Source of the DNA: Laetmonice hystrix
Taxonomy: Eukaryota
Assembly: GCA_965235115.1 (NCBI GenBank)
Contig: OZ249445.1
Span: 4,216,001-4,280,000 of the forward strand
Length of the DNA: 64,000 bases
Reading direction: 5' to 3'
Each line of letters begins with the position of its first letter. Position 1 is the first letter of the stretch. Positions 23,001 to 54,470 of the stretch are shown here, piece by piece. Made by a program: the position numbers and the translations under genes. The notes beneath the pieces were generated by a model. It saw nothing but the letters and a program-made list of their open reading frames with translations, ran no database searches and was not told where the DNA came from.

Positions 23001-25458
23001 AGAAAGAGTGTTTCTTTTTTAACAGAATCATATAAATATTATCAGTTAACTTAAGGTTACACTTATTTCTAGTCTTACACAACTAGTTTCAACAATAAAA
23101 TAAATTAAATGGTATACCATCATTACCCATGATGAGTTTTTTCACCCCTGTGCTCTTTTTAGATTTTCACCAGAAAGGTTTATGTTAAACTGATTGAAAT
23201 TGCCATTCTTCATAAAGTATTAGGTATGGAGGAAAAAACAGATTAGTTTATGAATCAGCAGATATTTCACCCATACGTTGCCACATCATTTTTCATCAGC
23301 AGGCATTGTTCAGCTGCCAGCTCAACTGAACGTCTAGCTCATTGTTTACAACTCAAAGACCTAATGGCTCACAAAAATGATCAGCAAAAAACTGGTCGTC
23401 ATCTTTTGGAAACTGGTTGCCAGCAGATGAACTTACGGCATGATGCACATACAAATGTGGGGGCTATCACAAGTGGTCTAAGAGTTGTCAAGGAGGTAGG
23501 TGTTGTCTAATGTTGTCATGATGGATGGTTGGCTGATCAGGTTGGATGCACCGATTCTTTCTACTCTTGTAGGACAGGTCTGAAAGGTGGTGGACCATCG
23601 CGGTGTGTTTCGTTTCAATTATACTCAAGAGTGGTTGGTTGGTCTTGTGTTTGTTGTCAGGGCACTGAGCAACGTTTAGTGCGAGTTGACACCGGCTGAC
23701 TGTTGACAATCTAGGTCTAGAGGAGTCAGCTGACTTGACTAGCGCGTTCAAGGATGGGGGATGTGACGAGTGACAACATAATCTGGCTGTGTGTGAAGTG
23801 AGGAGTTAGCAATACGCCAGGTGAGCTTGGCAGACTCAGCTGGCTCATCACATCTACGTCAAGGCTGGCCTGTGCTCGTCACAGAGACAATCTAGCAGCA
23901 CTCATGAGCAGCGGTCAGCGCTGGCTGATCTTAGGGCATAGGGGCAGTTCAATGCTCGGTCATGATGATGCTCAACTCAATCAACGGTTGCAATCGGTTG
24001 AAATTTCCCAGAAACTTTTGCAGGGATTATGTCTGCAATGCATGCGGACAGAAAAAGGTTACAAAGACGTTTGATTCATATGAATATTTGGGACATATTC
24101 TGAAATACGATTGTACTGCTAGTGGTCCTTACAACCTGTAAGTGTTAACACTTGGGGTCATTTCTTTGGACTAAATGGTAGATTAACTGCCATGTACATC
24201 TAAAGTTAAGTTCCAGGTTTGTCAGAACTTCGTGCAATGCCATTTATTCTATGGCATTATTACTAGTACAAGCATCCATTCAAAAAACAAACTTTCAAAA
24301 AAAGGAATCCTCTCAATCATATGAAGAACAAAACAAAAACCAGAATTTATAACATCAGGTAAGTGTAAAATATGAAATAGTAAAAAGCCTTCAAATGTTA
24401 CATCATATTGTGTAAAATTAGCGACTGTCAATTTATGCTTTTCAAAACAGAACACCAAAGCTTCGTCAGGTGAACCACACATGACCCGATATGACATGAT
24501 ATGCAGCAATATCCTACTTGCAAATCATTTCCCCACAATCATGGAGATTCATAGAAGTACAGATTCATAGAAGTACATGTACACATGGGAACCTAAAAGG
24601 TGCCAATGACAACATATCCACCCTGCATGCAAGGTGTAAACATGATCTACTTGGATAATTTATTTTTTCATAATCCTTTTCATTGTGCACTGGTTATCAT
24701 GACCACAATATTGGTGGGAAGAGTAAAAATTCTCCTTTGCAATTTACTAACCTTGAACGTCCTCTTTTCGAACCTGAGCCAGAACGTGAACAGTCATAGG
24801 CATAATGACCACGGCCACCACATTCATAGCAGCGATCATTTGGATCAAAAGGTTTTCGCAGTCTTGGTGGGCCCCTGCTTGAACCAGATCTCATCCATGG
24901 TTTAGATCCGACTTTCCCTGTTGATCTTTCCACACGAATTCGTGCCCCACAAAGTGACCTGCAAAACCATGAATCATGTCACTTAGTACCGGTACTGTTA
25001 ACATCCACTGCCAGTACTGGTCTCAGTAAACTTGACCTTGTTCAAGGATTCATCCCCCCAGAAATAAGTCCATTCATCATGTATCTTCTTTTCATACACC
25101 ATGTAAAAAAATCTGTATTAGAGAGGCAGTATTAAAAGCCCCTCTCAAGGTAAAAAATATTAGCCCTGGCTCTATAATAGGCCGTAATTTAACTTTTGAA
25201 ATACAGAATACCCTCAATAGAGTCCTACGTTCAGACAAATACATACGTGCCATCCATTCCTCGCACTGAGTCATCAGCATCACGTGGATCTTCATATTCT
25301 ATGAAAGCAAATCCTGGTGGATTGCGTGCGACCCATACACTACGAAGTGGACCATAGTATGAGAATGATCTCTCGAGTTCCTTCTCTGATGCATCGCGTG
25401 GCAAATCGCCTACATAAATCTTGCAGTCCAGTGGGGTATCACGTCCGTAACGAGGCAT
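20027..25458 (-). CDS. SRSF7: SRSF7 (9G8)-like SR splicing factor, RRM + CCHC Zn knuckle + RS domain; exons 25247..25458, 24752..24958, 22692..22745, 22461..22496, 21985..22017, 20929..20961, 20664..20723, 20421..20483, 20027..20105 (about 258 aa)
   Basis: RRM KIYVGDL...[16 protein letters not shown]; [23 protein letters not shown] closely matches the SRSF7 Zn knuckle. Seven phase-2 RS exons have canonical AG/GT sites and sum to an open frame (777 nt) ending GDD-TAA. Confidence 0.92.
23437..24032 (-). other. Candidate poison cassette exon of the SRSF7-like gene
   Basis: Acceptor tttttctgtccgcatgcattgcag| and donor gcc|gtaagt; in-frame TGA at 23981-23983; rich in CAAC/CATC. Same intron position as the vertebrate SRSF3/SRSF7 poison exons. 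Confidence 0.6.
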
Positions 25459-26489
25459 TGTCCACAATCTGCTTCACCTTTGATAATTAAAAGTAAGGTC
25501 AGTATTGTTGACTTTCTATCGCTCGATGCTACTGAATTTTCCAGTCGGGCTACTAGCCCCAGTTTCAAGAAAGTGGCTAAGTTAATTAAAATCATGGTTA
25601 ACTCCGACTTTAACCAAGATTGGTTAATTCTCCTTCCTGATTGCTTAATCTAGATGGCTCAAATTTATCTTAACCGACGTAATTAACTTTTAAATCACTA
25701 TTCTGAAATCAGGGCCAGGTCTCTCTCTACTGAGGGCTACCAGCTAAATGTTTTCTCTCTGGTAGACTGGGATTCAGGGTGGTTCTAACCATTTTCTGAA
25801 TCTCCAACAGGTCTCTAACTAGTCAGGATTCCCTTAATTATTTTTTAAAATGTAAAGATTGTGTTTGAAATTACTTGCAAGAAAACCCAAAAGTATAAAA
25901 CAAAAGCAGCAGGGGAAGTGGAACTAGAGTCTATGTTCATGTAATGGTAGTAAAAATTTAAAAATGTATCAAATTAAATTGGTGCCAGTGTCGTGGTTTG
26001 TTTTCTCCGCGGTCTGAAATCTTCGAGTGGTGGGCTGCAGAGTCGTGTGTAGGCTATGTGTGTGAGTGTGTTTGAACCGAGACTCCGACCATACACTGCC
26101 TTGTTGTTGAAAATAATAGGCCTACACCATAGGCAGCTATTTTTAATCTAAACATAAGTAAAAATAAATAGTATGGTTCTAAGCCTAACATAAAACTACC
26201 GCCAGACATTCAAAATTCTTTCTCAGTTTCTGCAAATCCGGGCGCATCTTAGACAGAATATCCATCTCTCTAGGCTAGCCGAGAGATGGACGTAAGCCCA
26301 CTGTAAATCCCATCGAAACACCTTACCACTACTCCCTCCCTCCTCCCGTGTAATCACGCGAAGAAAATCATGGTACAGTGAAGCGGTACCTAACCTTGAG
26401 CGATTGCATAAGAAATAAAGATCTTTATGTCCCTGTTGTTCATAGAAATTTGCTGAAATATGTTTGAACCGGCACATTTCATTCCATTC

Positions 26490-26532
26490 CGCCGCCATGG
26501 TCTATTACTGGGGGGCAAACGTCACTTCCGGT
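26490..26532 (-). promoter_or_regulatory. Candidate core promoter of the SRSF7-like gene (YY1-like ATGGCGGCGG, ETS CCGGAAGTG)
   Basis: gccgccat at 26491-26498 and cacttccgg at 26523-26531; a possible non-coding exon 1 donor (gtg|gtaagg) at 26327. Confidence 0.4.
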
Positions 26533-26987
26533 GTCAGGGAGCAGTTCATAATATCTACGCCACGAACTAACTTTGTCTGATAGGCAGTCTGCGCCATTTG
26601 ATCGAGCATGGAGTGCACAGGCGATATCGACGTCCCGCTGGACCCTGGCCTAGGTAGAGTTAATTCCAAATGAATTAATACCCGGTAACAACTCTATTCA
26701 ACCGCGGTCTAAAGCGTTCCAGAAGGGCCAACATCGCAAAATGAATGCTCCCCCGATTTGAGCTGTCGTAACGCCCACGAGACAGGCAAAATGCTCGCAA
26801 AATGGCGCCGCTCAGTAAACATGCGCGAGTCGCTGGATAAAAGTTCTGATTATTCATCAAGATTTACACCACCGCCGAACTTTGTGATATATTTTTTGCT
26901 TTGGGGACGGCAATATAGCAAAGTCACTTGATTTTTGGGCCACCATAGCGTCAGCTCTGTTTGGAACACAGAGCCAACGAGTTGGTA

Positions 26988-27629
26988 ACACGACATGTCC
27001 GCCCGTAGCCATGTCCGCCCGGTCATGTCCGCCCCCCGGGATGTAGGCGCTAGCCCCGGTCATGTCCCCCTTCATCATGTCCGGCCCTCGCCGCTCCACT
27101 CAAGAGGCGCCCGGCAAGGGACACGTTACCTACGAGGTGGCTCTCATTTGTTGGGCACTTAGCGATTACAATAGTTGATCTAGAGTTGTCGATTCTCGTT
27201 TCCGATAATCCGGGCATTTCTAGGTGGCGCTGCTATCTTCTCTTTTTTTTTCTTTTTTTTTTTCTCTGGTCAGAGCCGGTGAATACAAAAGCCTAGCAAC
27301 GCAACGGAACTAAATATAGGTGTTACTGGCTTGGGTTTGATCATCACACCATCCTATAATTAGACTGTCACGGGGGGCAACGCTTCTTGATACCCTTGTT
27401 TTCACCGGTCGTCAGGCTACTCAGGACCGGAAGAACTGACCTCGGAAACGAGAATACGCTCCTCTAACTCAGTAGACTGTCCTAGTCACGTTGACGGCTT
27501 TTCCCGGGACCACGGGCGGCAGGGTGAGCAGAGTCGAGTGTCTATCACAGAGGCACAGCGGGCGGGCGGGCATAGTACCGAGGGGCGGACATGACCGGGC
27601 GGACATGGCGACGGGCGGACATGTCGTGT
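26988..27629. mobile_element. MITE-like element with 48-bp terminal inverted repeats made of three catgtccgccc subrepeats
   Basis: acacgacatgtccgcccgtagccatgtccgcccggtcatgtccgcccc (26988) is the reverse complement, with one mismatch, of ggggcggacatgaccgggcggacatggcgacgggcggacatgtcgtgt (ending 27629). No clear TSD. Confidence 0.75.
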
Positions 27630-27722
27630 ATTCCTATGTTCGACGAGTTGGCTAGGGCTAGAGCCTAGCCTAGCCTGCATCCTGTCCTGTGACAGGCTGT
27701 GTATCATTGTATGTAAGTCTAA

Positions 27723-35414: not shown

Positions 35415-38400
35415 ATGGGACGATCCAAGCCAACCTCCAAGTCCCAGTCCAGGTCACGATCAAGATCAAGGTCACGTCATCGCGAGCGGCGACATCGCAG
35501 CAGGTCTCGTAGTCGCAGTGTCAGCACCAGCTCAGAGGATGATGGTTTTCGTATCCATGTGGCAGACTTGGGTATAGACTGCTCCAAGCGAGAGCTTGAG
35601 AATGCCTTTAAGAAGTTTGGCCCCCTCCTTGAAGTTTGGTTGGCACACAACCCACCCTGCTTTGCCTTCGTTGTGTTCCAGTATCGTGAGGATGCTGAAG
35701 AAGCCATCCAAAATATGAACGGAAAGTAGGTAGCATTTGGTAAAAGTGTTAAAACTTGGCTACCATTATCTTGTCCCTGGTATACATTGTAAGGAATCAC
35801 TGTGTCAATGTGTTTTATGGGTCCATATTGATCTTGGTTTTAAAAATTAAAAGTGTCACATATAAAAGCTGTTTTATAGCCCTGTCATTTTCCAAGTTTT
35901 TACCTTCTGCCTCTCACAGTGTCAGGTGGTGTACTATTACTGTGTCTTGGATACTAAGTCTCCAGAACATACCCTTGTATATTGTATGGTGGTGTTTCTC
36001 AATCTCTGTCTGTGCCAATACTTCTTACCTCACTTTGCTGTAACAGCTGTCCCCTTAAAAACGTTTTATGTGAAAATACTTGTAAAGAACCAGTTGTATG
36101 ATATAACTTATTATCCTATCTGTCCTAGTTCTATTTCAAGACGTAATTAATATAGCATAGTTTTTAAATAATTGATGCCTGGTTATGTGCAGTGTTTCTC
36201 TTCAGTATGCCAGTGTTTGACGTGACCTAACCTGACCTATTTCTTTGATTGTTGTCTCCCAGGCAGATATGTGGTTCACGGATCAAAGTGAGCCTGGCCA
36301 GGCCAAGGACACGGGGTCTGCAGCGGAAGCGGGGGTTTGACCCCAACTTACGATGCTATCAGTGCGGAGAGTGTGGCCACTTCTCCCGTGATTGTGACCA
36401 GGTGTGGCGGTTACGTAAACAGCAACCGCCAGGCTCAAGGTCAGTCAGCGCTCACGGTTGCTTTCATTAATTCATACCGGCCAGCCTTTCTGTATAATGT
36501 TGAATTTTGATAAAACATTTATATTCCTCATTGCTCTCCTGATATAATAGATTCACAAAATTCACAGAACAAGTATACATTTACTCTCTTTACCATCAAA
36601 GGCAAATTTTCACTGGCAAGCAACATGGCAGCACCGTGTTGTTGGTTTAAAGTGGAAAGAAAGAGAATGACACTTGAATTAGGATGAAATCGAATCTACG
36701 ATATCTGAAAACATTCTCAAATTTATTCTTTTTGATGATTCTACATTCAGTTGACCAAATGTTGGCAAGTATGTGAATTGAACACAAAAGCCCTTAAACT
36801 CTCAAGCATGTGGAGGCAGTATAGCTATTTGTATAATAATTATTTTAAAAAAAATAAAGTAATTAAGTGCTTCTTTTAGGTAAAGACCAAACTAATCACT
36901 AATAGATGGAAGCTTGTTTGCCCAAAGCCTTATGTATTAATAATATCAAAATTCTTATGAGAAGGAGCATAATGTAATGGTGATAAAACAGTCTGCTGGA
37001 GTCATATTGACTTACTTTAATGCATACAATGTTGTTGAAGTAGAGAACTTCAAGACACCAATTGTGATTATCAGCAGGGCTGGCCCGCTGCGCTTCAACT
37101 TGAGTGAACACTGGGAAATCTCAGACGATGATATTATCAACTTCAACAGGTGGGTGTTAGCAAAACTGCTATTTATATAGAAATATACTTTCCTTTGTTG
37201 CATACAATGGGCAGGTGTGGTGATATCCAATGCACTAATGGTGAGAGTACCCCGGGCCAGGCAGGCTGGTAGTCATGAGTTTATAGCTGTGAGCAGAATG
37301 AGATGTATGTAAGGCATTAGGTAATGATGCCTGACAGACCTGTTGGTTCTCTTATGATATTCATTTATACATTACCCGACAGACATAATGAATGATAGTC
37401 CTTGAGTCAGGATACATGTAGCCAAGGCAATCCAATATTGATAAATTCAGTGAAGTAACAATGTGACTGTCCTTGAGAATAACATATCTTGACATTTGCC
37501 TTTCAGCCTTAAGGCCCTGATCCACTGAGGCGATTGTCTTTGTGATGTCCATGCGATTTTGACATTACTCTTTTACTTTACTGTGACTTTGAGATTAAAG
37601 GATGGAGGCCATTTCCAGAAACAGGGAAGGCCAGCCAGGAAAAATTACAGTGAAATTCCACTATTAAATAAAAAATCGCATGGACGTCGCAATGGAAATC
37701 CCCTTAGTAGATCGGGCACTTTGAAGCGGCAGTCTCCTCATTAAATTGGTTAGATATTGGGGCCATGTTTTTCTGTTCTATTAATGTCTCAGTTTCAAGT
37801 CAACTGTGCAATCCTAGTTGAAAATATCATACTCATTAGCTGAAATTGAAGTGAGCAAGATCTTATATACGAGATGGCTCAAGTGACTTTAGATAAAGTC
37901 ACTGTGTAAGGCCCGCCACACACTATACGATTCCCAGTCGGCGCCCCCGCACACTATACGACTTGAGTCGTAAGTCCCCGCACACTTTGAGATCCGACTG
38001 TTGGTGACTGTGATCCGATTCAAAATTCCAATTGTTGTTTGGGGCCTTGCGACCCCTTCTGATCATCGTAAGCAAGTCATAAGCGGGTTGTAAGCCCCAG
38101 AATGCGATCGGATCATAGGAAAATCGTATAATGTGCGGCGGGCATAAGAGTTGGAATAATATCGCTCAGTTGACTGCAAGGGCACAGTGTAAGGGCTGGA
38201 AGAATATACATCAAATTTTACATGCAAACTGTGGTGTATAGCACCAAAGAGGAATTTTACATGCACATTTTGGTCACCCAATGACTTCCGCTGATGAGAC
38301 TGTCGCTTTAGCCATTTTAAAAATAAATATCTGTTAACCCTTTCCAGACGGACCGGCCAAATTTGGCCGGTGAATTTGCATTAGAATTGGTATAAAATAG

Positions 38401-39943
38401 AAAACAAATCAGTCTGGAAAGGGTTAATACGTGAGAGTGCTGCTCAGCTGGCCTCCAACATGAGACGTCTGAGTGATACCAAGACCATTTTTCCAATCAG
38501 GCGTGACTAAGTGGTGCCTATGGTGATGAGACCTGGGTTGTGGGCTGGTGGTGTGAAGTATAAAATGGTCATTGTAAGGTTGTCATGGGCAACGACTGCC
38601 ACGGCGGCTGCTGCATTTGAGGTGATTGTTTCTCCGTCTGCTTCGTCTGTTGTCTGCAAAGAACGGTATGGTTGTGATATCACTGGTGAAAAAGGTTGAT
38701 TTTGACATTGTCACAATGTGCCACTGACCTTGACCCAGATAGACAGAATAATGTTAAAATCCATTTGACAAAAGAGTAAGGCAGTAGAGGTGAGGGATTG
38801 GCCTCCACCACTGTGTAAAACGGGTCACATGGGCTCTTCCATGTCAAACTTTCTGTCAAACTCAGTCCTCTAGTGACTAAGATTTTATCATTGAACACAT
38901 TTCTCACTGATGATGTCTTGCACCACTTCTGTCCAGTACAGAATAAGGTTAAATGATGATGTAACGTTTCCCCAGAGGGAGGCTTCCAAGAGTCAATAAT
39001 TTGTTAAGAGAAGGGTTGTCAAAATAACATTTTTGTCCATGAATGTGGTTGTGACGGTAATTCACAAAAGATTTCAAAGGTTTCCTTTCTCCTCTTTACA
39101 GAACACCATCAAGGTCAAAATCGAGATCCCGCTCTCGATCAAGGTCAAGATCGAAGTCAAGAAGTTCAAGACACAAAAAGTCGAAGCATAGAAAGTCATC
39201 CCGATCTAAAGAAGGGTCACGTCACAAGAAAAGATCTCACAAAGATAAAAAAGAAAAGCATGAGAGGTAGGCACATCCGTACATTTGACAAGTGACAAGA
39301 TGACACGAGATTCTATGTTGATAACATAATGTGAAACAAAACCCTACTGACAACTTCAGGAGGGGTCTCAAGTCTCCTGAAATGCAATGTAATCTCTTGT
39401 ATTGGTTGTAGCTCAAAGGATAGATCAAAGAGATCCGACGAAACTTCAGAGAAGCCGGCAGCGAATGATAATGAGATAGCAGCTCCAATGGATGTGGTGG
39501 AGACTTCAGCGACAGAGGCAGCACCTAGACCTGAAGCCAGTCTATCCGTGAACACTGAGGCTAAGTCAGTAAGCAGTTCTTGTGTTCCGCCCAGTGAAGG
39601 CAGTAGTAGTGTGGCCATTGAACCTAGTCTGAGAGATGTCAGTAGTCGGCACCTACCGTTAGGTGACCGGAATTCCACACTGGCCACCGGGTCGGAGCTA
39701 ACTTCAGCAGGGGAAACACCAAACAAAGTCATAACACCTGAACCAGATGTTACATTACCTGTTGTGTCACCTGAGAAACCCACCGGAGGAAAAATTATTC
39801 CCACAACCACTGCTGGTTTGGTATCCCCCTCCCAGAAAGCCATTTCACCCTCGGCAGTGAAGCTGACCATCATGTCATCCAACAAGATGACTATGATTCC
39901 ACGAGTCGTCACAGTCAGTGCTAACAATAGAATCCAGTCTTAA
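35415..39943 (+). CDS. Atypical SRSF3/7-family paralog: N-terminal RS, RRM, Zn knuckle, RS/basic region, S/T/P-rich tail; exons 35415..35725, 36263..36439, 39102..39266, 39412..39943 (about 394 aa)
   Basis: [35 protein letters not shown], then RIHVADL...WLAHNPPCFAFVVF and ICGSRIKVSL...FDPNLRCYQCGECGHFSRDC. Phase-2 introns sit at the same positions as in the other two paralogs. The 1185-nt frame is open to TAA at 39941-39943. Confidence 0.88.
36880..37149 (+). other. Candidate poison/alternative cassette exon of the atypical SR paralog
   Basis: Acceptor ttcttttag| at 36879 gives AGG then TAA; donor aacag|gtgggt at 37149. ATG 36977 opens 57 codons that reach the donor in phase 2. Confidence 0.4.
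37910..38144. mobile_element. PIF/Harbinger-like MITE
   Basis: TAA|ggcccgccacacactatacgatt ... aatcgtataatgtgcggcgggca|TAA; termini related to the 27723 element. Confidence 0.8.
38338..38423. mobile_element. 86-bp piggyBac-like MITE
   Basis: TTAA|ccctttccagac ... gtctggaaaggg|TTAA: perfect 12-bp TIR, CCC/GGG ends and TTAA on both sides. Confidence 0.8.
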
Positions 39944-39963: not shown

Positions 39964-39969
39964 AATAAA
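39964..39969 (+). terminator. Candidate polyadenylation signal of the atypical SR paralog
   Basis: AATAAA 20 nt after the stop codon; motif only. Confidence 0.3.
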
Positions 39970-43200: not shown

Positions 43201-43468
43201 TTAGTAAAGGCATTTCTCAAGCCTGGACCTCCAACATATATACAAATACCAGTTCTTTTCCAGACTACCCAAACTGGAACAGGAAATCTGCACCAATGAG
43301 CATATACACCGGCTGCCGATTCCTCGCCCCCCCCCCCCTCCCTCCAACCCTGCTAAAATGAGAAAGAAAAGTTTGTACCCAAAAAGAATGATAACCGTGT
43401 TCATTCCCCACTTAACCCTCTTCAATAGAAAGATCCAGTACCGAACACTAGTATTTTCCACATTGGGT

Positions 43469-46400
43469 TCAATAGTTATCCCCTTCCCCATTTGCCTGTC
43501 TATGCGTTTCATCTTCTGAAACATTTGAAGTTACACTAGCTTTTTTCTCATGTCTCGAGTCCGTTTTTTCACCATTCGTTTTGCCCTTTACATTTGCCTC
43601 CCGGTCAAGGCTATCCCTCTTCGATTTGTCTATGGACCTTGACCTTGATCTTGATCTTCCACGGGACCCACTTTTGTTCAGATCGGTTGATCTCGACCTC
43701 GATTTTGTTTTTGAACCCTTTATTGTCGGCGACTTGGAGCGTGACTTAGACTTCACTTTCCTGGACAGGTCTCTCCCGAAGCGATCAAGCGAACCTTCCT
43801 GTGATGCCGACCTGTCCCTGTAAAACATCAACGTAGCAAATTGAAATGTAACGTAACAAATTGAAGTATGCGAAGTTATGTTCAAAACTTTCACATATAC
43901 AACAAAGTCTAAATAATAAATGAAACGCCTTTTTGTTCATGGACTTCTGATAGCTTCCATTCTAACGTTGTCAAAAGTTCAGCATAAATTTCTCCGGAGG
44001 GCTATATAGGAGGCTGAGTACGACATCCAAACTGGCACAAGAACAATGTCAATTGAATCTCTCCAATGAACTTTGAAAATGGGCTACAATATGATATTTA
44101 AACTTGAAGCCAAAACTTCTCTAACTCCGCGTCAATAGCTTGCATCTAATCAACCAATATCCTTGCGACAAAGAACGCCTCAAAAAGACTCAACAGCCTC
44201 TACCTTTTCATTACAAATCTTCACACCAGTAAGCCAAGTACAAATGCCAGCTTCACTTGCACCTAAACATATACGTTTATGCATTACAACACTCTTTATT
44301 TCTAGTCGTTTTAACTCGAAACTCTTAGTTTCGGTGCCTGTAATAAACGGTTACTGAACAGTGGATAACATGCTAAACATATAGTCGCAGCACACCCAAT
44401 GTGTGCTTGGTGATGCAGTCGTGTTGTTCAAGGATGTGATTTCCATCGATGGCAGTTTAGGATGCATGTCGTTTAATGCCGAGAGTGGAAATAAATAGTC
44501 TGAGTCTACAGGAAAGGTTAATGTAAAGCCAATCAAAACATTAAAATTCCACCGCAGAGCTGACTGATGCAGATGAAATTGATGGAGAAGTGTCATGCAG
44601 TGGTCGTAATTCTCATCGTACGAGTGTAGAGCATTGAAGAATGGCCTTTTATTCCTGCACACTTGCTCCAACGCTGGATGAAGTTACATAAATTGATCCA
44701 ACGAAGGCAAATTTTGAAGTGCGTCGAATGAAGCTTAGACATGATGATCCAGTTGGAGGTAAATTTTGAAGGATAGTTGATATGACGATGGGTTCATATT
44801 TGCTGTCATTTTAAAAAGCATGAGTTGGTGGATTTGGCTGGTCCCTCGATGGCAAGTATGGTCAGTCAAAACAAGTCACCCAGTCTCCTGCAAAGCTACC
44901 CTATGGGTAAGATTTGATTGAAAATAATAAGGAAATTCTGCACCTGATGTGCTGCCGTTTCTGCTGACGACATCTGCCCTGTATCCAACTGTAGGGTGCT
45001 GAGTCGACTGGCCGATGGTCCAGCGCAGAGTTGTCCTCTGAGCCACTACTTACAAATGGCTGCTGAAGAGCAGTATACAGAAGTGTAGTGCTGTTATGTG
45101 ATGCGTAGTGTGTTGGTGTTTGTACTGAGCGGGGTTGGTGGTGATTCCGTGGTGCACGCTGACTTTGTACTTTGTCACAGGTCAAGACTCCATGACATTA
45201 TGGAAATCTATCAAGACCACATACTTCAAAGTGACAAGTAACTTCCAAAGGCTACAGGATAAAACACGCCTATGTCACTGTCACCACCACAACACAGGAC
45301 CTGTCGCCGCTTCAAGCAAAAGTCAAACAAAGATGTTCTGACTCATGCAGCTACAGACAGTGGGACCTACTACGGAGCTACATTAGGGAAGCGTGTACCC
45401 AATTTGAGTCAAAAAGCGCAAGAGACTATCAATGGCATGCGGGGACAAGACCATGTTTAAAGGAAAGTACGGATGACAACACACGCATACATCTCATACC
45501 ATGGCTGAATCCAACTTCCACTATCAACTAAACCAACTTAAAGTGGCCTGAAGAGAAAACCAATGGTAATGTCCAAAACGGCACAATTCCCCAGTTACTC
45601 TCTGAACTGTAAAAAAAAAAAACACTTTCAGTGTAGTTTCTTGTGTACAGGTTTTTTCGGGAACATTGGTTTCAGCACAAACATTCACACTATTTCGCCC
45701 CAGGACAACAATGATGTGTTAGGTTAGTTCGCCAGAACCTATTTTTCCACATAAACTGTCCTTTTCTGCTGTCGTGAGACCACCTTTGCCACCGCGGATC
45801 ACAAAGGCCAAGTTTCCAAGTTTTCTTTGTGACTCAAAGGGTGAGACACTTTTTTTTTAAATATTGGCGACGGCGGTCGTCAGTCTGGCAGCAGCAAAGA
45901 CAACTTTTGAGGACTTTCCTTCCCTCTCTTTGACTTTAGTCACTTACGTGGGGTGGAAAGGCACTAGTGTGTTGGCGATTCAGTTCTTTGATGTGGAAGT
46001 TCTTCAAATGAGACAGAGGGGGAAAGGGGAAAATCATGAGTTTCTACTTTTCAGTTAATACATGAAACCATACGTAAAAGATAACCATTTCAACGTTGAA
46101 AAAGAGTTAGTTTCATAAAATCCATCAATTCTGAATTTATCGCATGAACAATAATTATTACTATCATGAATTACTTTGATAAACATTCTTACTGGCCAAA
46201 TCGCCTTCGTTTGTATACATTATAACTTTTTTTCTAGTACAAGTTTGAACGTTATGCTGTTTCCACACACACTGAACAAAGTAGAACTACAATTATAACG
46301 TCTTGGAATAGGGCAGTCTGTATCCTTTCTGTCTAGCTTGCAAGGATCAAGCCACCACACCAGATAGCACGACAGACAAAAAGAGCCCCTTGGTGATTAT

Positions 46401-49400
46401 TTTAGTGGACAGATGTCATCGAGGGTTATTCACAGGTACTTCACGGTGTGTATTTCTAGCATTACTGAAATATCAAAACTATTATGTACTGGTCTCCTGA
46501 TTCGTAAACTACCATCAATCAAGTTACACTCTAGTTGCACCATGATTAAAATGATTTTATACCACTAAACATTTACACCGCCAAACTATCGCTTACTGCG
46601 CATAAAGGTTGAAGAAGCTTTTCCTCAAGTTGGAGAACACAAGTTTTTAAGTACATGATAATGACCGTTTTTATTTCACATGGGTCCAGAACTAATGTAT
46701 ACAAAATGAGAGAGGGTGAACACTTCTTGGGGCTCAACGAGCCAAATCGTAACAGATGCTTTCAACTTAGAAACAGATTTTGACAATAATGTTTAGTTGG
46801 GTTAAAATGTATAAAACAAACGCCTTTTAGTTATAGGCATCAGGAATAAAGATCGCGTGTCTCATACCTAGCAGAATGTACCATAGTTAACTTTTAGACA
46901 ACAGACAAGTGCAAACTTTTAAGACAATACCACAACTTATTTGGTTAACAATCTCGGACCAATCCTTCATGTGACTGCAGACAATTACGAGCGACCTCTT
47001 TCTCCTTCCCCTGCAGGCCAAGTCCGTATTACTACACACACATCAGGCATTAGCACGTGCCAGATTGTTCACAGAGAACCATTCTGACATTCAGAGTTAC
47101 TGCTTCCTCAAACTCAATACCAGTATACCTTTCAGCTTCCTGAAGGTAGATTTTTACTGGCACTTTGATGTGGGGGCCAAACAATTCAATTTACAACTGT
47201 CACCTTGCGATTGCTTTACCTTACAGAGGAGAATTACATGTATCCAAAGGATACGCTAAAAATTCTCTTGAATGACACTGAAACTCTTTACATTGCCATT
47301 GGAAGATGTCACAATTCCTGAAAACCTGTGGCTGGTTATCCCATGGCCTTCTAATCGAGACGTACAGATAAAAATTGCTGCCTAAAAGACTTAACTCAAT
47401 CTCCAAATAAAACGTTCTCAAACATGCTGCAATTTCTTATGTGGCAGTTGACAAGTCAATTCAATCCATCTTGTCATTTCAATTTCCTTTAGGTAATCTT
47501 CTGATGCCTTATCCACAAAATCTAATCATAACGTCTCAAGATCTCTGCAACATTCTAGCTTACAACTTGTTTCGTAACCAAATAGACAAAGTGGAAAACT
47601 ACCCTACTGTGTACCGCTAGTCTCACGTTGCAGACAATACCTAAATGCAATGATGTCCCCACATTCTAGATCCTCTGTGTACAATATCAATGGAATAAGC
47701 CTTCTACCAGACTATACTGTGTGCATTTTGAACAGGATGATGGTAATTAAAATCTTACAATTCTAAGGGAAAGATACTATTCACCCCAGGAATTCAAGGT
47801 TACATTCCTAACTGCAAATGAGTCATGGTTCTTTGACCAATTGCCCACCTTGAACCAGACGTTCTGACTTGCAGTTCAATCAATCCCGATCGTACACCTG
47901 CAGTATTATGACAAGTTAAAAATGACACCTTAGGATATTTTACTAGGCTAACCGTCTTTGTTCTGTATCAGCAGATTTCAACATCGGTCAAGCAATGGCT
48001 GCAACCGCCACAGTAATTTTTGCTTACCATACTATTCAACATTGCAGAGAATACAATCAGTGGAGAACAGAACTGTGAACAGGCAAACGTGAACGGCACC
48101 CTGTGAATCTCTCCTAATAAACGTCTAGGTTTCCGTCAGATGGACCCTCTACTGTTAATCTGCTTCACTCATGGTTAGTCAAACATCAATCGGAAAGCCC
48201 TATCCAAAGATTTCTGATTACATGATTTGTAGATTAAATTAAGACATCTTTAACTTTTTGTTCCTTTTTATATTTTTGTGCAACAAATTCTAATGCTCAA
48301 TTTGAATAGGGCCCTTTACAAGTCATCTGAGTGCACCCACAAGGTTTTCTATTTCTTTCTGAGTGTGGGGCCAGTATGTAGACTAATAAAACATACACAG
48401 TTTAGAAGGTGGAATGTTACAACATTTTGATAGCCTACTTCTTTGAAATAAATGATCTTCACGGTGACACTTGTATTATGAACTTATTTTCTAACACTGA
48501 CAAAACCAAGGCTGCAGAGGATAAAGTCTAAAACACTTGGGAGTCACTTTTCTTCAGTTACGGTATTCAGCTTAAGTTGTCTAATCACATCCTGGCAGAA
48601 GAATGTGCTCTTCACATCTAGTGTTTCCTACAGAGATCCTTAGCACCTAAACATGGCCAGCTGGATTGCCAGATATATTTCCTTAATTTGAACTGTCTGT
48701 ACACATACAAAAGGGGGGGGATTGCCATTACATGCTTCTACAATATTAACATTGAATGACTTTTTTCAAGATCTTGTGTTAACTTCCAACGTCTTCCCAA
48801 GTCTTGTTCGGTACAATAGTACACTTGTAGAGAGTAATTCTTTAAACTGGCTGCATCTAGAAGGTCTCATTCAACGTCACCAGGAGTCTTTCTTTATGCA
48901 TTTCTTTTCCAGATTTGTCAAGTCATTCAACTGAAACCAAAAAGCATTACGACGATCATAAATAAGAGCATCTTGGAGCCACTACGAAGTGTTCATTTGT
49001 AGATGAGGTGGCGAACGTAGGGCCAGAGTGGAGCTAGAGCGAGCCGTAGACTTGGTACAAGAGCGGAGTTGCATGCTGAAATCTGTGTTGGGGTAAATCT
49101 GGCGTTATTTAATTCACATCATTGCCAACTGCAATCACACCTTCAGTCAGCACCGAGCTTTTACACCAAACTACACACAGAAGCTTTGTCCTCAAAATAT
49201 AGTTTTGTCAACTCACCTTCTCTCCCTAGAAGCGGAGCGACGACGATCTCTTGAGCCAGACCTTAAAAGGGAAAAAATCAAATATTTATCAATTTGCCTG
49301 AAATGATTCAGCAATAAATTGCCCAGCAATATTTTTTTTATGTCGGGACAGGTTTTTTTTTCTGGTGGCAAGTTGCAAAATTCTGCAATTACAGGACCTG

Positions 49401-52400
49401 ATAGACCTATTCCGACAAAATTGAGTAGGGATACACAATACGACCGATACCCAAATTACACCCTTTTTTCAAAAAATTTCTGAGGAAGGCCTCCCAGTAA
49501 GAGGGGAAATCCCCCTGTAGGAGGGAAACTTACCTACGCCCTGCGATGCATCACAATTACCTACCTAGCTCTACCTGACAATTACCCTCATGCTGAAATT
49601 TTCTTCTAGTTCTATCTAGGACATTGTCTGTATAAATATTATTATTGATTCACTCACCTGCTTCGGCTGCGGCTGTAGCTACGGCTGCTTCTTCCTCGTC
49701 CACGTGGCGAATACGACCTGCAAAAGGTTAGACACCATATCAGAGATGTTTGTGTTAGCTGGCGTGGCTGCTACTAGCTTTATGCCATTAAAAGGGTTGA
49801 AGGCGGGGGTTTGACCACATACAGGTAAACCAGATTTGCCAAATAATAAACACTTATGCTGCCTTATTAGGCATCCTCTCCACCGGCAAAAAATAACTGT
49901 ACATTACCAAAACTAAATAAAGAGGCAATATAAAACTACACAAACCCACAGACAGCCACATCAGGAAGAGGTTACGAGTAGTAAAGTGCTTGGTAAGTCA
50001 GGCATAACTAGCATAACGGACTGGGGTTGTCCACATGACAAGACACGATCTATTGGTGTCCTTGGGCTCTTAACAGGTACAGATAAGAAATCTAGCTAGC
50101 ATTTTACTTTTAACATTTTTCGATGGCCAGGGCTAAGTTAGGGGGGATAACCACCAATTTGTTGCCCTGTGACAGTCACCCAGCATGGGTTTTCCAAGCA
50201 GCATCCGAGGCCATTACCACTGGTCTATCATTCAACTTTGGGAGATATGTATATCAGCAACTGCAATCTTTCAGTTTAGACTGGGCTTGGGGGGCAGCAA
50301 TCGTCTCTATGGCGTTCAGTTTTATCATGCTATATATATAAAAGCCTTATTTAGCAACGGTGGGGCAGTCAGGTTTAAAGTACCAGACACTGCCTACAAT
50401 TTTTTTCAACATAATTTACATTTTCAGCTTTCACTCACAAACAAGTGTCTGCTTGTGATGTCTTTGCATCTTGAGAAAGAAGAGATGCTGAAATTTGCAC
50501 TTGTTTTGGCAAGAATTATTGTTAGAAAAGCTGCTTTTCTGGTCTCCTCATGGACAATCTGAATACAGAAAAAATTGTTAGCTCAGCCAAGTTTGTTCAC
50601 CAGGTTGAGAGGGGGCCCAAAGAGCAAGGGATTGGGATTTATATTTTGAAATGAGGTTAATGGAAGTGACAGAAATCCCACTTGTACGAAGCTGTCTACT
50701 GTGGAAAAAAATAAAATCGAATTTAAGGCCAAAAAAAAAATAGATTCGTTTCTTGTCCCCGCGCGCGTCACCTAAAAACCCCCGCGTCAAGTCTTTTTTT
50801 TTCAAATCCGACTGCTTCATATGGTGGGCAGTGTAGCACTGTGACAGAACGTTGCAACGGTTCTTTGGCGTTGGCGTTTTTCTGTTAGTCTTGTTGATTT
50901 TATGTGAGTTTTACACATTCTAAAACATTGAACATCATTGCATTAGCATTTTCTTCAAGATTTATGTACCCAACAGCAATTGCATTCGAAGAATCGGCCG
51001 TTGTCTAGTTGCATCCAAAAAAAAAAAAGAAAGATGAAAAAAAAAAAAAACCGCGTCACCGCACCAATTTTTTTATATGAAAGGACAAGAAACGAAACTT
51101 TTTTTGGGGGGGGGGCCTAATCGGTTCCAACTCCTAATATTTGAAGAGAAAACCCCCTGGAGGATTAATTTGGTTACTTGCCCCCAGCAGGGTCTCCAAT
51201 ATCCCTTAAATGCAAGAAAATTTACTTAGTTCTAAAGCAGACCCTGATCTATTTCCAATTTTCTCAGGCTATGACTATGAGGGCAAGCAAACACTTTGCA
51301 AGCTTCTATTGGTTGAGAGAGCAGAGATATGCTTTCAATACACTGTCAGGCATGAGAGTGACAACTGAAAAAAAAAATCTGAAAATTTCCGGGGCTATGG
51401 AAAATGGCGAGGCCCTTGGGATATTAAGGGGCAAAGCCCCTGTAAGCTGAGCAAACAAAATCAGGTACCTTAGAGTTTTCACAAAACAGTTTGCATCAAG
51501 ACTTTATGCCAGGATGATGCAATGTTGCAATGTTTGCTGACAAGTTTTGATGAATTCAAACAGGTTTTACCCTCCCCCCGCCCATCATAATGCATTTTGA
51601 GATCTCAACGGATTTGCATCGATCTCGATGACCACAAATTTGGATGTAAAAAAATCGGAATTCCGAGAATAATCAGAACACTCTCATGCCTGTACACTGT
51701 ACCTCTGCCACTTCACAAGCCACTGCCACTCCAGGATACTTTCCACACACAAGAATTGATATTTAAAGATTTTAAATCTAAATTTAGTGTCTGACATTTA
51801 CATGAGTGGACTGCCTGTTGTTGGAGGTCAGCACAAGTTGTTTCTAAATTATGAGGTCTACCAGGAAACCAGCTTTTCAATCTCACCAACCCTTGAAAGG
51901 GCCAACAAATAGTGCCAGTTGCAAGAGTAAGATCTTAAGGCCAGTGTGTCCAAATCACTTTTCAAACTGCCCTTTTCTTAAAAAAAAGAAAGCCCTTTTC
52001 CCTATCGTCCAGCATCGATAAATTTAAAAGAAAAAAAATACAGGAGGGACCAAAGAGGAAAAAAGAAATTTTGAATTTTGTTTGAAATGTTTGTGCCAAA
52101 GCTAACCTGGCTGACTCGAGCTTTTATTTATAACGGGCACACCTACTCTGTACCTGGCCGTAACTCGTGAAGAAACCATGACAGAGGAGGCCTGCCGCCG
52201 CCGGTCACCCACATGGTGGGAAAGCCCTTAGACTATTTCTTTGGCACAGCTGTAGAAGACTGACAGGATGTTATGCTGCCAAATTTGGAGCGACGATTGC
52301 AAAAGGGCAGGCAGCAGCCCAAGTTGCGACGAACGATTTGTTGCCGCGGCGGGGGTGCAGATCAGGTCTACGGAGGAGACGCAGACAGCTGGGCCGGGCC

Positions 52401-54470
52401 AACCTGTGCTGGTTGCGGCTGTGTGGCTGATTGTTGACCTTAGGTCATGCGACTGATGCTGCGGAGTGTATCTGTAGAGGCTGAAGCAGTTGGTGCCTGA
52501 GGCAGAGCTGATGATGATGTAGTAGTGGTGGGACAGTTGAGAGATTTGTTGTTGTGGATGGTGGTGGGCGACTGAAGGGCTGGCATGGCGGGAAGAAGTC
52601 ACATGATCGACACATGGTGGCCATGTGGACACATGGACGTACGCGGACGTTTGGAGTCTGCGTGCGATGCGCAGTGAGTAGAACCATAACGAGGCTGGGA
52701 GTTGGGATTCATGTCCTGTAAATTGGGCAGCCAACATGAACACACGTTAAACATCACTTGACAACTGTCAACAACGATGCTTGCTCAGACACTCTTAAAC
52801 TAGTTCAAGCTACACTGCCAAAAACAATATTTTTTTAACTTTTTTTTCCACTTATGAAATTTCATTTTACTTTACATACATTCTTTTCCAAAATTTCATT
52901 TAATCAAACAGATTCAGGTATATATTCCAATTGAAAATTTCCATTACTACCAGCCTCTGAAGGTTTGTTTAGAGCACGCTTCCAAAAGATAACCACCGTC
53001 GTAAGACAGGACATTATAGGGGATGGGGCTTAAAGGTTTTAGTTCTCTCTCCATCTTCATCTGAAAATTAACGCTCCTGTCAGCATTCAGCAAATACAAT
53101 TGTAAACCAGTTATCAATATATGGCATGGTGCTCTCCCTCTCACCGTTTTAGGTCCCTGTGTTATGAGCAAGGGTTTTGTGTTGGATAGGCAAATGGGAA
53201 ATAAAGACTTAGAACTGAGTGGAGAAAAGTTTCTCCCATGATCAACAAGGTCTGTTCTGTAGTAACATAAACCAAGTCAGAATTCTACCAAGCAGACACA
53301 ACAGGTTCATGTTTTGGTAGACATAAGTCATCACTTTTTCTTTCCCACATTAATTTCACAAAGCTTAAAAAAATTGTTTGTAGTAACCTGAAATAAAAAT
53401 GTTGAAGTTTGCATCATACAAACACCCACAGAACAGTCTGAGGTACAATTACTTTGTTCTGATGACTGCATACCCATACAGATCTGGTAAAACTGCACAT
53501 ATGCCATAGATTACTGGAATATTTCTGACATCAAGGGCAAAACAGCCGCCATCGTACAAGAAATCCATAACAAAAGTCAACCAACTTGACAAAACTGACT
53601 CATAAATTTACTGTCACAATCAGCATGGTAGTCATTCCTCTAACTTTCATCAAAGGTTGTTTAGTCAACTGAATGCTGCATAAATTGGCAGCTGGTACAT
53701 AAAACTAGCTAACACAAATATTTCCTTTGAAAAATACTGCATAAATCTCTGAACTAGTCATGGAGGAACCTTATTACAACTGCATCAATAATCAGGAAAA
53801 TCATTGTGAAAACCCATAATCAGCAGACATATCACTAACACTTCATCTTCAGTTGCAGCAGCTGGAAGTGAAGAAATGCAGCCTAGTAAAATAATGCGAG
53901 TCCTACCTAGAACGCCGACGATAGCGACTTGAGTTGTCACGTCCATAGTTGCTTCCATAGCGGGGCCCACTTGAGGGAAGTGGGCGCCGTCCGCCACGTC
54001 TTGAACGACCTGTTGACATCTCAACCCGCACACGTCGACCATTCAGTCGGCTGAAGGGGGGTTTATAAAATGAGAGAGATTTATCGGTAGGTATATTTAA
54101 GCGACACAGGGCATTCATCAGAAAAATCATACAAAATAAAAAAAGCTCTTTGAAAAAGTCAGACATAGGTACGGTATAGAAAATAACAGGTATAGAATTT
54201 AAATCCCATCTGTTTCAATTTACAGCCATGTTACACTTTCTATATTACAAAATACTTCATTAAAAGTTAGGCTTACCTTCCATCCAAAGCCCTAACTGCA
54301 TCCTCAGCATCCCGGGGGTCTTCAAACTCAACAAATGCAAATCCTGGTGGATTTCTTGCCACCCACACATTGCGAAGTGGCCCATACTTTGAGAAGACAT
54401 CTTCCAGCTCTTGTTTGGCTGCACCATAGCCTAGGTCACCTACATACACCTTGCAGTCCATGGCTGTCAT
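43469..54470 (-). CDS. SRSF3: SRSF3 (SRp20)/RBP1-like SR splicing factor, RRM + RS, no Zn knuckle; exons 54277..54470, 53907..54050, 49658..49717, 49217..49261, then 43469..43817 (about 263 aa) or 48982..49075 (about 178 aa)
   Basis: [13 protein letters not shown]...[43 protein letters not shown], followed by phase-2 RS exons. The RS-rich exon 43469..43817 (ttttacag|) is in frame, and no other RRM exon lies between 43.8 and 49 kb, so it is assigned to this gene. Confidence 0.88.
45948..46001 (-). other. Candidate 54-nt alternative exon of the SRSF3-like gene carrying a stop codon
   Basis: Strong pyrimidine tract ttttccctttccccctctgtctcatttgaag| and donor cac|gtaagt; phase-2 entry reads RTSTSKN-TGA. 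Confidence 0.45.
48982..49075 (-). other. Candidate proximal terminal exon of the SRSF3-like gene
   Basis: Acceptor gatttcag|; in frame it reads [34 protein letters not shown], a degenerate RS-like sequence. Confidence 0.4.
50727..51117. mobile_element. PIF/Harbinger-like MITE
   Basis: TAA|ggcc...ttcgtttcttgtcc on the left and ggacaagaaacgaa...ggcc|TAA on the right. Confidence 0.7.
52154..52814 (-). other. Candidate poison cassette exon of the SRSF3-like gene
   Basis: Acceptor ttgtttttggcag| at 52814 (alternatives at 52809 and 52715 also give immediate stops); TGA at 52805-52807; donor cag|gtacag at 52154; dense CAAC/CATC runs (caccaccatccacaacaacaaatctctcaac...acatcatcatc). Confidence 0.6.

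What the first reader, a model, noticed from the sequence alone, without database searches (positions are those of the whole stretch)
23437..52814. Shared stop-then-restart (Split-ORF-like) cassette in the homologous intron of all three SR paralogs
Seen: each gene has a candidate exon in the intron between the RRM(/knuckle) exons and the RS exons (23437..24032 minus, 36880..37149 plus, 52154..52814 minus). Each gives an in-frame stop within 1-17 codons and contains an ATG (23450/23441, 36977, 52179) with no stop before a phase-2 donor, so it is in frame with the RS exons. The three exons show no obvious sequence similarity beyond CAAC/CATC-type motifs. Established: mammalian SRSF3 and SRSF7 autoregulate through a poison exon at this position, and the SRSF7 poison isoform has been described as bicistronic (RRM half plus RS half). 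Inference: a clustered, possibly cross-regulating system in which each gene can make full-length, RRM-only and RS-only products. Caveat: exon ends were chosen by eye, and an in-frame ATG near a donor can arise by chance.
Basis: partly seen in the sequence, partly recalled or inferred. Interest (0 to 1): 0.8.

Follow-up and report, generated by a model that had tools for sequence, protein, structure and literature searches.

The report
Conserved poison exons in clustered SR genes
Two of three neighbouring SRSF3/SRSF7-type splicing-factor genes in this invertebrate genome carry a real, conserved, roughly 600-base "poison" exon of the kind already known from mammals, while the proposed stop-then-restart (Split-ORF) design is no better than chance and is not conserved in relatives.

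Summary
The window holds this genome's only three SRSF3/7-type genes: A (minus strand, with a zinc knuckle), B (plus strand, divergent, with a knuckle) and C (minus strand, no knuckle).

**Gene C: exon confirmed, boundary corrected.**
- One RNA contig from the same organism joins 53907>52715 and 52154>49717.
- The exon is therefore real, but it is 52154-52715 (562 nt), not ...52814.
- It gives a stop at codon 3.
- It is also found in transcript contigs of three other organisms.

**Gene A: supported by conservation only.**
- The acceptor at 24032 and the first ~200 nt align with the same intron of two distant SRSF7-like genes, one of them from the bivalve Solemya velum.
- No junction reads could be obtained. 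The donor at 23437 is inferred.

**Gene B: no support.** The candidate (36880-37149) has no RNA, no conservation and no motif enrichment.

**Shared motif.** The A and C exons, and the three relatives' exons, are packed with CA(U/A)C, the motif class bound by SRSF3/7.

**Restart ATGs.**
- An in-frame ATG arises in 29-42% of shuffled exons.
- Eight other ATGs come before it in both A and C.
- The gene C ATG reads ACG in a related organism.
- Three SRSF7-like relatives have no in-frame ATG.

**Verdict.** These are ordinary autoregulatory poison exons: new members of a known kind. The Split-ORF layer is unsupported.

The parts
25247..25458 (-). Gene A (SRSF7-like), first coding exon: start codon and RRM
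   Evidence: Translation and GT donor. Pfam RRM_1, E 3.6e-16.
24752..24958 (-). Gene A, CCHC zinc-knuckle exon ending in a phase-2 donor (AG|GT)
   Evidence: Pfam zf-CCHC above its cutoff. Homologues are mollusc SRSF7-like proteins.
23437..24032 (-). Gene A poison exon (596 nt). TGA stop at 23983-23981. The donor at 23437 is inferred, not shown by RNA.
   Evidence: The acceptor and first ~200 nt are conserved in L002 and in Solemya L005. Exon-versus-exon alignment gives z 5.7, against 1.1 and 2.1 for the flanking introns. CAWC density is z 5.3. The RNA-like run X4 holds only 0.28 of the words of 23300-24200.
23439..23450 (-). ATG-TGC-ATC-ATG: the two 'restart' ATGs of gene A, 4 and 1 codons before the donor
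   Evidence: Sequence. Only 13 codons are open before the donor, and 8 other ATGs lie upstream. Not conserved in frame in L002, Solemya or L006.
20027..22745 (-). Gene A RS-domain exons: 22745-22692, 22496-22461, 22017-21985, 20961-20929, 20723-20664, 20483-20421, and 20105-20027 with the stop
   Evidence: All have AG/GT borders. The joined frame gives a 259-aa SR protein.
35415..35725 (+). Gene B, exon with an N-terminal RS stretch and a divergent RRM
   Evidence: Pfam RRM_1, E 6.9e-13. 50% identical to the gene C RRM.
36263..36439 (+). Gene B, CCHC knuckle exon with a phase-2 donor
   Evidence: Pfam zf-CCHC.
36880..37149 (+). Unsupported.
   Evidence: The sequence is as described. There is no CAWC enrichment (z 0.7) and the pyrimidine tract is weak. 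No Pfam match to its ORF. Single copy in the genome. No RNA or cross-species data could be obtained.
39102..39943 (+). Gene B RS exon (39102-39266) and last exon (39412-39943)
54277..54461 (-). Gene C (SRSF3-like), RRM exon
   Evidence: Joint 54277/54050 seen in X4 and X5. Nearest solved structures are the SRSF7 and SRSF3 RRMs, E 1e-27 to 1e-28.
53907..54050 (-). Gene C exon 2 (no knuckle), with a phase-2 donor
   Evidence: Joints seen.
52154..52715 (-). Gene C poison exon, 562 nt, TGA stop at 52711-52709
   Evidence: One 619-nt X4 contig carries both joints, 53907>52715 and 52154>49717 (tables 5 and 8). Also laid in organisms B, C and D. CAWC density z 4.3. Single copy.
52177..52179 (-). 'Restart' ATG of gene C, in the RS frame, 8 codons before the donor
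   Evidence: Sequence. Reads ACG in organism C (loose end of X7, table 7). Eight other ATGs lie upstream, and one of them overlaps it out of frame.
43469..49717 (-). Gene C RS exons 49717-49658 and 49261-49217, and last exon 43820-43469
   Evidence: Joint 49658/49261 is seen in X4. The X4 loose end at 49216 matches the start of the exon at 43820.

Best explanation
Genes A (SRSF7-like) and C (SRSF3-like) each carry a long cassette exon of about 560-600 nt, in the phase-2 intron between the RNA-binding exons and the first RS exon.

Proposed mechanism:
- Including the exon puts a stop codon 3-18 codons in, far upstream of several later exon junctions. The transcript should therefore be degraded by nonsense-mediated decay, or at most give an RRM-only protein.
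- The exons are dense in CA(U/A)C, the motif class bound by SRSF3/7-type RRMs.
- The likely circuit is the classical one. Excess SR protein binds the exon, promotes its inclusion and lowers productive mRNA.
- Cross-talk between A and C is plausible because both exons carry the same motif class.

Shown:
- Both isoforms of C exist in RNA.
- The C exon is conserved across four organisms.
- The 5' third of the A exon is conserved across distant lophotrochozoans.
- The motif is enriched.

Inferred:
- NMD sensitivity.
- Protein binding and the feedback itself.
- The A donor at 23437.

The in-frame ATGs near the donors are incidental. The gene B candidate exon is unproven.
For: Gene C RNA:
- A single X4 contig (619 nt, depth 70) carries joints 53907>52715 and 52154>49717.
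- The skipping joint 53907>49717 has depth 446.
- The same exon is laid in organisms B, C and D.
- In organism B there are 26 substitutions in 704 nt over the exon. Coding exons show 17 in 146 and 23 in 244.

Shared exact words: runs of three other organisms share exact 31-mers with the C exon (shares 0.40, 0.07 and 0.06).

Gene A conservation:
- The acceptor block and several other blocks of the A exon are shared with L002 and Solemya L005.
- The exon alignment gives z 5.7, against 1.1 and 2.1 for the flanking introns.

Annotated isoforms: truncated SRSF7-like isoforms with non-RS tails after the knuckle exon are annotated in Ostrea edulis, Biomphalaria glabrata and Mya arenaria. They also occur in the transcript contig L006.

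Motif density:
- CAWC is 2.9-3.5 per 100 nt in all five verified or homologous exons.
- The background is 0.78 +/- 0.49 per 100 nt.
- The window's two highest 200-nt peaks fall inside the A and C exons.

Family context:
- Searches place the RRMs in the SRSF3/7 family.
- One search shows A, B and C are the genome's only three such genes.
Against:
- X4 holds only 28% of the words of the A region, against the 66% expected for a fully assembled exon. The A donor or the exon length could therefore differ.
- NMD sensitivity, protein binding and feedback are untested.
- All depth figures come from contigs, so the roughly 14% inclusion estimate is rough.
- Organisms B, C and D are coded, so their distance from the window's species is unknown.
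Confidence: 0.8

Rival explanations
1. The three exons are Split-ORF cassettes. After the stop, ribosomes restart at the ATG near the donor and make an RS-only protein, which may also protect the transcript from NMD as described for mouse SRSF7. Each gene would then yield full-length, RRM-only and RS-only products.
For: - In-frame ATGs do exist in A (23450, 23441) and C (52179), and the C donor and ATG lie in a real exon.
- The C ATG has G at -3 and G at +4.
- There is a precedent in SRSF7, summarised in bioRxiv 10.64898/2026.05.22.727176.
Against: - Chance gives such an ATG in 29-42% of shuffled exons.
- Eight other ATGs lie between the stop and the restart ATG in both A and C. In C, one in good context overlaps the restart ATG out of frame.
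- In organism C the codon is ACG (table 7).
- In L002 the ATG next to the donor is 1 nt out of the RS frame.
- In Solemya a TAA directly precedes the by-eye donor.
- In transcript L006 a TAA lies two codons before the RNA-verified junction.
- The gene B exon is not shown to exist.
Confidence: 0.08
2. Gene B also has a poison exon at 36880-37149, so the cassette is shared by all three paralogs.
For: - It has AG and GT borders, an immediate TAA and a phase-2 donor.
- The intron is homologous to those of A and C.
Against: - The pyrimidine tract fails even a lax filter, and the 'acceptor' AG|GTAAAG is itself donor-like.
- There is no CAWC enrichment (z 0.7) and no similarity to the A or C exons.
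- A 78-codon open stretch is about the longest expected by chance in a 2.7-kb AT-rich intron (my estimate).
- The B intron contains several stronger acceptors and donors elsewhere.
Confidence: 0.15
3. The A and C exons are splicing noise or retained-intron fragments with no regulatory role.
For: - In organism B the contig over the C exon runs on into both flanking introns (records 17 and 20). Part of the signal there is therefore unspliced RNA.
Against: - In the window's organism, exact exon-exon joints lie on both sides within a single contig.
- The exon has fewer substitutions than the coding exons in organism B.
- Blocks of the A exon survive between distant lophotrochozoans.
- The motif enrichment is shared by five species.
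Confidence: 0.04

Closest known systems
Mammalian SRSF3 (exon 4) and SRSF7 poison cassette exons, which drive autoregulatory splicing coupled to NMD
   Same: - The same gene subfamily. The nearest solved RRM structures are SRSF7 2HVZ and SRSF3 2I2Y/9ASQ.
- The same intron, between the RRM/knuckle exons and the first RS exon.
- An early in-frame stop, a long exon, high sequence conservation and clusters of the protein's own binding-motif class.
   Different: - The host is an invertebrate.
- No sequence similarity was detected between the A and C exons.
- Homology to the vertebrate exons was not tested.
- NMD and autoregulation are inferred here, not shown.
SRSF7 Split-ORFs (Koenigs et al. 2020, as summarised in bioRxiv 10.64898/2026.05.22.727176)
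   Same: An ATG inside the poison exon, downstream of the stop and in frame with the RS domain, is present in A and C.
   Different: - It is at chance level.
- It is preceded by eight other AUGs.
- It is not conserved: ACG in a relative of C, and no in-frame ATG in three SRSF7-like relatives.
- No translation data exist.
Drosophila Rbp1 / Rbp1-like negative feedback and cross-regulation (Kumar and Lopez 2005, cited in PMC4274639)
   Same: Invertebrate SRp20-type paralogs that control their own and each other's productive splicing. This is the kind of cross-regulation proposed for A and C.
   Different: - Here the paralogs are physically clustered within 35 kb.
- Cross-regulation here is only inferred from the shared motif class.
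- The details of the fly mechanism come from my own recollection. The paper itself was not held.
Unproductive splicing of SR genes across eukaryotes (Lareau and Brenner 2015, PMC4379411)
   Same: Poison cassette exons in SR genes are strongly constrained in sequence and can be old.
   Different: In the passages retrieved, that study concerns SRSF4/5/6. The text names SRSF3 once and SRSF7 not at all. The lophotrochozoan SRSF7-type exon seen here is an additional case.

Membership tests
SRSF3/SRSF7 subfamily of SR proteins | A single N-terminal RRM of the SRp20/9G8 type | tested here: met
   Pfam RRM_1 in A, B and C. For C, the best solved matches are the SRSF7 and SRSF3 RRMs, E 5e-28 to 5e-27.
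SRSF3/SRSF7 subfamily of SR proteins | A CCHC zinc knuckle (SRSF7 type) and a C-terminal RS domain | tested here: met
   zf-CCHC above its cutoff in A and B, and absent from C. RS-rich C-terminal exons are present in all three genes.
SR-gene poison cassette exon (splicing coupled to NMD) | A cassette exon that is both included and skipped in RNA | tested here: met
   Gene C only. Inclusion joints 53907>52715 and 52154>49717, and skipping joint 53907>49717, are all present in X4.
SR-gene poison cassette exon (splicing coupled to NMD) | An in-frame stop more than about 50 nt upstream of a later exon-exon junction | tested here: met
   A: TGA at 23983-23981, 545 nt before the donor. C: TGA at 52711-52709, 555 nt before the donor. 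Several junctions follow in both genes.
SR-gene poison cassette exon (splicing coupled to NMD) | Sequence conservation above that of the flanking intron | tested here: met
   C: laid in four organisms, with fewer substitutions than coding exons in organism B. A: exon z 5.7 against intron z 1.1 and 2.1 when compared with L002, and blocks shared with Solemya.
SR-gene poison cassette exon (splicing coupled to NMD) | The inclusion isoform is degraded by NMD, and inclusion responds to the protein's own level | not testable with these tools
   This needs an NMD block and overexpression or knock-down. Only indirect support exists: CAWC clusters at z 4-5.
Split-ORF transcript (SRSF7 type) | A start codon inside the poison exon, after the stop and in frame with the downstream half | tested here: met
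   Present in A (23450, 23441) and C (52179). In B it sits only in an unverified exon.
Split-ORF transcript (SRSF7 type) | The start codon and frame are maintained by selection, meaning more than chance and conserved in relatives | tested here: not met
   Shuffles give 0.29-0.42. The codon is ACG in organism C. No in-frame ATG in L002, Solemya or L006.
Split-ORF transcript (SRSF7 type) | The second ORF is translated | not testable with these tools
   No Ribo-seq or proteomics data. Eight upstream AUGs argue against access by scanning.

The most novel reading that the evidence does not exclude
The SRSF7-type poison exon is an ancient element shared across lophotrochozoans. Its acceptor block, about 600-nt length and CA(U/A)C clusters would be shared by this organism, the L002 animal, a protobranch bivalve and a gastropod-like animal. 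The A-B-C cluster would then preserve the ancestral tandem arrangement of the SRSF3 and SRSF7 lineages, with cross-regulation through a common motif class. In this lineage alone, the donor-proximal ATGs might add a low-level RS-only product.
Probability: 0.12. Interest if true: 0.6.

Novelty: new member of a known kind. Interest (0 to 1): 0.33.

Why it matters
- It shows with RNA that the SRSF3/7 poison-exon design of mammals is used in an invertebrate. The design comprises the same intron, an early stop, a long conserved exon and self-binding motif clusters.
- The SRSF7-type exon keeps recognisable sequence blocks between distant lophotrochozoans. That pushes the likely age of this autoregulatory device back.
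- It gives a compact locus for testing auto- and cross-regulation, because it holds all three family members within 35 kb.
- It corrects the boundary of an exon that annotation would otherwise get wrong.
- It removes an attractive but unsupported Split-ORF claim.

Tried and rejected
**Protein fishing for transcript contigs**
- I searched the protein collections with ORFs lying inside the A exon and the C exon (against all 1.84 billion representatives). Both searches returned nothing.
- The transcripts of organisms B, C and D could therefore not be fetched. The C donor and ATG region could only be read for organism C, from a 30-letter loose end.

**Sequencing runs**
- No run is on record as RNA. 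X4 was recognised as RNA-like only from its spliced contigs.
- Only one read-laying run was allowed, so genes A and B have no read evidence.

**Fetching relatives' loci**
- P0002 returned no DNA because the file was too large.
- P0001 and P0004 sit on short contigs without the intron.
- In L003 the RS exons lie beyond the fetched 10 kb.
- P0012 is not on record.

**Full-length queries**
- Closer relatives of A, B and C were therefore not retrieved.

**Similarity among the three exons**
- blastn found no similarity among the three exons, or between them and anything else in the window.
- None has a second copy in the genome.

**Other negatives**
- Rfam found nothing in 19000-56000.
- The very deep bins at 50683-51243 are poly-A low-complexity sequence, not a small RNA.
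- The GAYGAY (SRSF7-type) motif occurs only twice in the B candidate. That is too few to count.
- Kumar and Lopez 2005 could not be read.
Full report
**What is in the window**

Six-frame reading and splice-site tracing give three SR genes.
- Gene A (minus strand, 25458 to 20027) encodes an RRM, a CCHC knuckle and seven RS exons, 259 aa in all.
- Gene B (plus strand, 35415 to 39943) encodes an N-terminal RS stretch, a divergent RRM, a knuckle, an RS exon and a long Ser/Thr/Pro-rich tail.
- Gene C (minus strand, 54461 to 43469) encodes an RRM without a knuckle, followed by RS exons.

Pfam finds RRM_1 in all three genes and zf-CCHC in A and B. The nearest solved structures to the C RRM are those of SRSF7 and SRSF3. 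A search of the whole 627-Mb assembly with the C RRM exon finds only these three loci. The cluster is therefore the genome's entire SRSF3/7 subfamily.

The best protein matches of A are mollusc 'SRSF7-like' proteins at 65-74% identity. The host is an invertebrate, probably a lophotrochozoan. Its identity is otherwise hidden.

In all three genes, the exon before the first RS exon ends in a phase-2 donor (AG|GT).

**Checking the observation**

The sequence features are as described for A and B.
- In A, the exon 23437-24032 has an AG acceptor, a TGA stop after 17 codons, a GTAAGT donor and ATG-TGC-ATC-ATG-CC just before it.
- In B, the exon 36880-37149 has a TAA at codon 2 and an ATG that opens 58 codons up to a phase-2 GT.

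For C, the donor at 52154 and the ATG at 52179 are right, but the 5' end is not (see the next section). blastn finds no similarity among the three exons. Each is single copy in the genome.

**RNA evidence for gene C**

No public run is labelled RNA. Run X4, from the same organism and sample, has 59 Mb of contigs and behaves as RNA, because its contigs carry exon-exon joints.

I laid it on 49000-54600.
- One 619-nt contig (depth 70) joins 53907 to 52715, runs through to 52154 and joins to 49717.
- Another contig joins 53907 directly to 49717 (depth 446).
- The constitutive joints 54277/54050 and 49658/49261 are also present.
- A loose end at 49216 matches the start of the exon at 43820, which fixes the 3' end of gene C.

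The cassette exon is therefore real, but it is 52154-52715 (562 nt). The frame reads AG|G ACA TGA, a stop at codon 3. X4 holds 0.74 of the sampled words of 52100-52870. That equals the exon's share of the stretch.

**Conservation of the C exon**

Runs from three other coded organisms share exact 31-mers with this stretch, at shares of 0.40, 0.07 and 0.06. When laid, each gives a contig over the exon (table 8).

| Organism | Range covered | Contig |
|---|---|---|
| B | 52091-52794 | 1940 nt |
| C | 52200-52718 | 577 nt, depth 657 |
| D | 52200-52716 | 584 nt |

In organism B, substitutions are distributed as follows (table 8).

| Segment | Substitutions |
|---|---|
| Poison exon | 26 in 704 nt |
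| Coding exon 2 | 17 in 146 nt |
| Coding exon 1 | 23 in 244 nt |
| Adjacent intron | 17 in 152 nt |

Substitutions are thus rarer in the poison exon than in the protein-coding exons, although it also carries 35 gap letters. This is the behaviour known from vertebrate SR-gene poison exons.

**Evidence for the A exon**

The A knuckle exon finds SRSF7-like genes on foreign contigs. Two genomic loci were fetched:
- L002, from an ENA metagenome assembly. Its knuckle exon is 61% identical in protein to that of A.
- L005, from Solemya velum (GCA_048127485.1).

In L002, the intron after the knuckle exon contains the block TGCATTGCAG|AC(A/T)TAATCC. It matches the A acceptor at 24032 exactly in position.

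A global alignment of the A exon with the L002 exon (10942-11598) scores z 5.7 against shuffles. The flanking introns score 1.1 and 2.1. The signal lies in the first 200 nt (z 5.3).

Solemya shares the acceptor block, a GGAA(A)TTTCA block and a GCTGACC block about 145 nt into the exon.

Early stops follow in both relatives, at codon 6 in L002 and codon 3 in Solemya.

NCBI isoforms with non-RS tails directly after the knuckle exon exist in Ostrea edulis, Biomphalaria glabrata and Mya arenaria. A metatranscriptome contig (L006, gastropod-like) shows a 595-nt insert at exactly this junction.

The A acceptor and 5' third are therefore conserved, and the exon class is old. Two points remain open:
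- The donor at 23437 is a consensus GTAAGT, but no RNA shows its use.
- X4 holds only 0.28 of the words of 23300-24200, against the 0.66 expected for a fully assembled exon.

**Motif content**

CA[TA]C is part of the WCWWC/CAUC class bound by SRp20 and 9G8 RRMs. That statement rests on my knowledge of Cavaloc 1999 and Hargous 2006.

In 200-nt windows, the motif reaches its window-wide maximum of 11 inside the A exon (23401-23700) and the C exon (52401-52600). The background mean is 1.55 and the 99th percentile is 6.

| Exon | CAWC per 100 nt |
|---|---|
| A | 3.4 |
| C | 2.9 |
| L002 | 2.9 |
| Solemya | 3.5 |
| L006 | 3.0 |
| Background | 0.78 +/- 0.49 |

The motif load is kept even where the sequence no longer aligns. 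That fits a binding-site-driven exon and the classical negative feedback. It also makes cross-regulation between A and C plausible.

**Gene B**

The candidate has no CAWC enrichment (z 0.7), and its pyrimidine tract failed a lax filter. Its 'acceptor' is AG|GTAAAG, which itself looks like a donor. Its ORF has no Pfam match. No RNA or cross-species data could be obtained. A 78-codon open stretch is about the longest expected by chance in a 2.7-kb AT-rich intron (my estimate). It remains a guess.

**The Split-ORF claim**

Four tests were made.
1. *Chance.* In 2000 dinucleotide shuffles of each exon, an ATG in the RS frame after the last in-frame stop occurs with probability 0.32 (A), 0.29 (B) and 0.42 (C). 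For the two verified exons together, that is about 0.13.
2. *Access.* Eight other ATGs lie between the stop and the 'restart' ATG in both A and C. In C, one with A at -3 opens a frame that overlaps the restart ATG.
3. *Conservation in C.* The loose end of the organism C contig next to 52200 reads, on the gene's strand...CCTCTGTCACGGTTCCTTC. The window has ...CCTCTGTCATGGTTTCTTC. The ATG is therefore ACG in organism C (table 7).
4. *Conservation in the SRSF7 type.*
   - L002 has ATGC|GTAAGT, so the ATG is one base out of the RS frame, and no other in-frame ATG lies in its 9 open codons.
   - Solemya has TAA directly before the by-eye donor.
   - In transcript L006, whose junction is given by the RNA itself, TAA lies two codons before the junction.

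The Split-ORF mechanism itself is real for mammalian SRSF7 (summary in bioRxiv 10.64898/2026.05.22.727176). Nothing here indicates that these exons share it.

**Comparison with what is known, and novelty**

SR-gene poison exons, their extreme conservation and their auto- and cross-regulation are established (Lareau and Brenner 2015, PMC4379411). Feedback between the fly SRp20-type paralogs Rbp1 and Rbp1-like is cited in PMC4274639.

The present case adds an RNA-verified SRSF3-type exon and a deeply conserved SRSF7-type exon in an invertebrate, in a compact three-gene cluster. It is a new member of a known kind. The most novel reading still open is that the SRSF7-type exon is shared across lophotrochozoans and that the cluster preserves an ancestral tandem arrangement. 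I rate that at about 0.12.

**Limits**

- There are no read data for genes A and B.
- Organisms B, C and D are coded.
- All depths come from contigs.
- The 3' ends of the exons in L002 and Solemya were chosen by eye.
- Spliced full-length proteins could not be used as queries.

Noticed in passing
window 43469-43820 (minus strand) and 49216: Gene C does not end near 49217. An X4 contig continues from 49217 into an exon that starts at 43820. That exon encodes about 117 further RS/K-rich residues and ends at the stop 43471-43469. The gene therefore spans about 11 kb.
   Followed up: partly
window 44401-44600 (minus strand): A third CA[TA]C-dense stretch (8 per 200 nt) lies in the last intron of gene C. 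It could be another regulated exon or a binding platform.
   Followed up: no
window 5801-6100 (minus strand): Another CA[TA]C-rich, C/T-rich stretch (8-10 per 200 nt) lies outside the SR cluster. Its gene context was not examined.
   Followed up: no
window 49694-50228 and 52091-53022 (organism B contigs): In organism B, the contigs over the C poison exon and the first RS exon run on into the adjacent introns, at about 6% of exon depth. This looks like partial retention of the introns flanking the poison exon, as described for mammalian SR genes.
   Followed up: no
window 36878-36885 (plus strand): The 'acceptor' of the gene B candidate reads TTTTAG|GTAAAG. An acceptor directly followed by a donor-like sequence is the pattern of recursive splice sites.
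   Followed up: no
window 35402 (plus strand): An out-of-frame ATG lies 13 nt upstream of the presumed gene B start codon (35415) and opens a 36-codon overlapping ORF. The true start or 5' exon of B is uncertain.
   Followed up: no
window 60178-61137 (plus strand): A 320-codon open stretch encodes tandem RRMs of the A1CF/RBM46/RBM47/hnRNP-R type, so another RNA-binding protein gene lies next to the cluster. The family name is my reading of the sequence and was not searched.
   Followed up: no
window 53942 (organism B, table 4): The organism B orthologue of gene C has a 21-nt in-frame insertion in exon 2. It is a repeat of CCAGATCCA-type units on the plus strand, and lies in the Gly/Arg-rich linker.
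   Followed up: no
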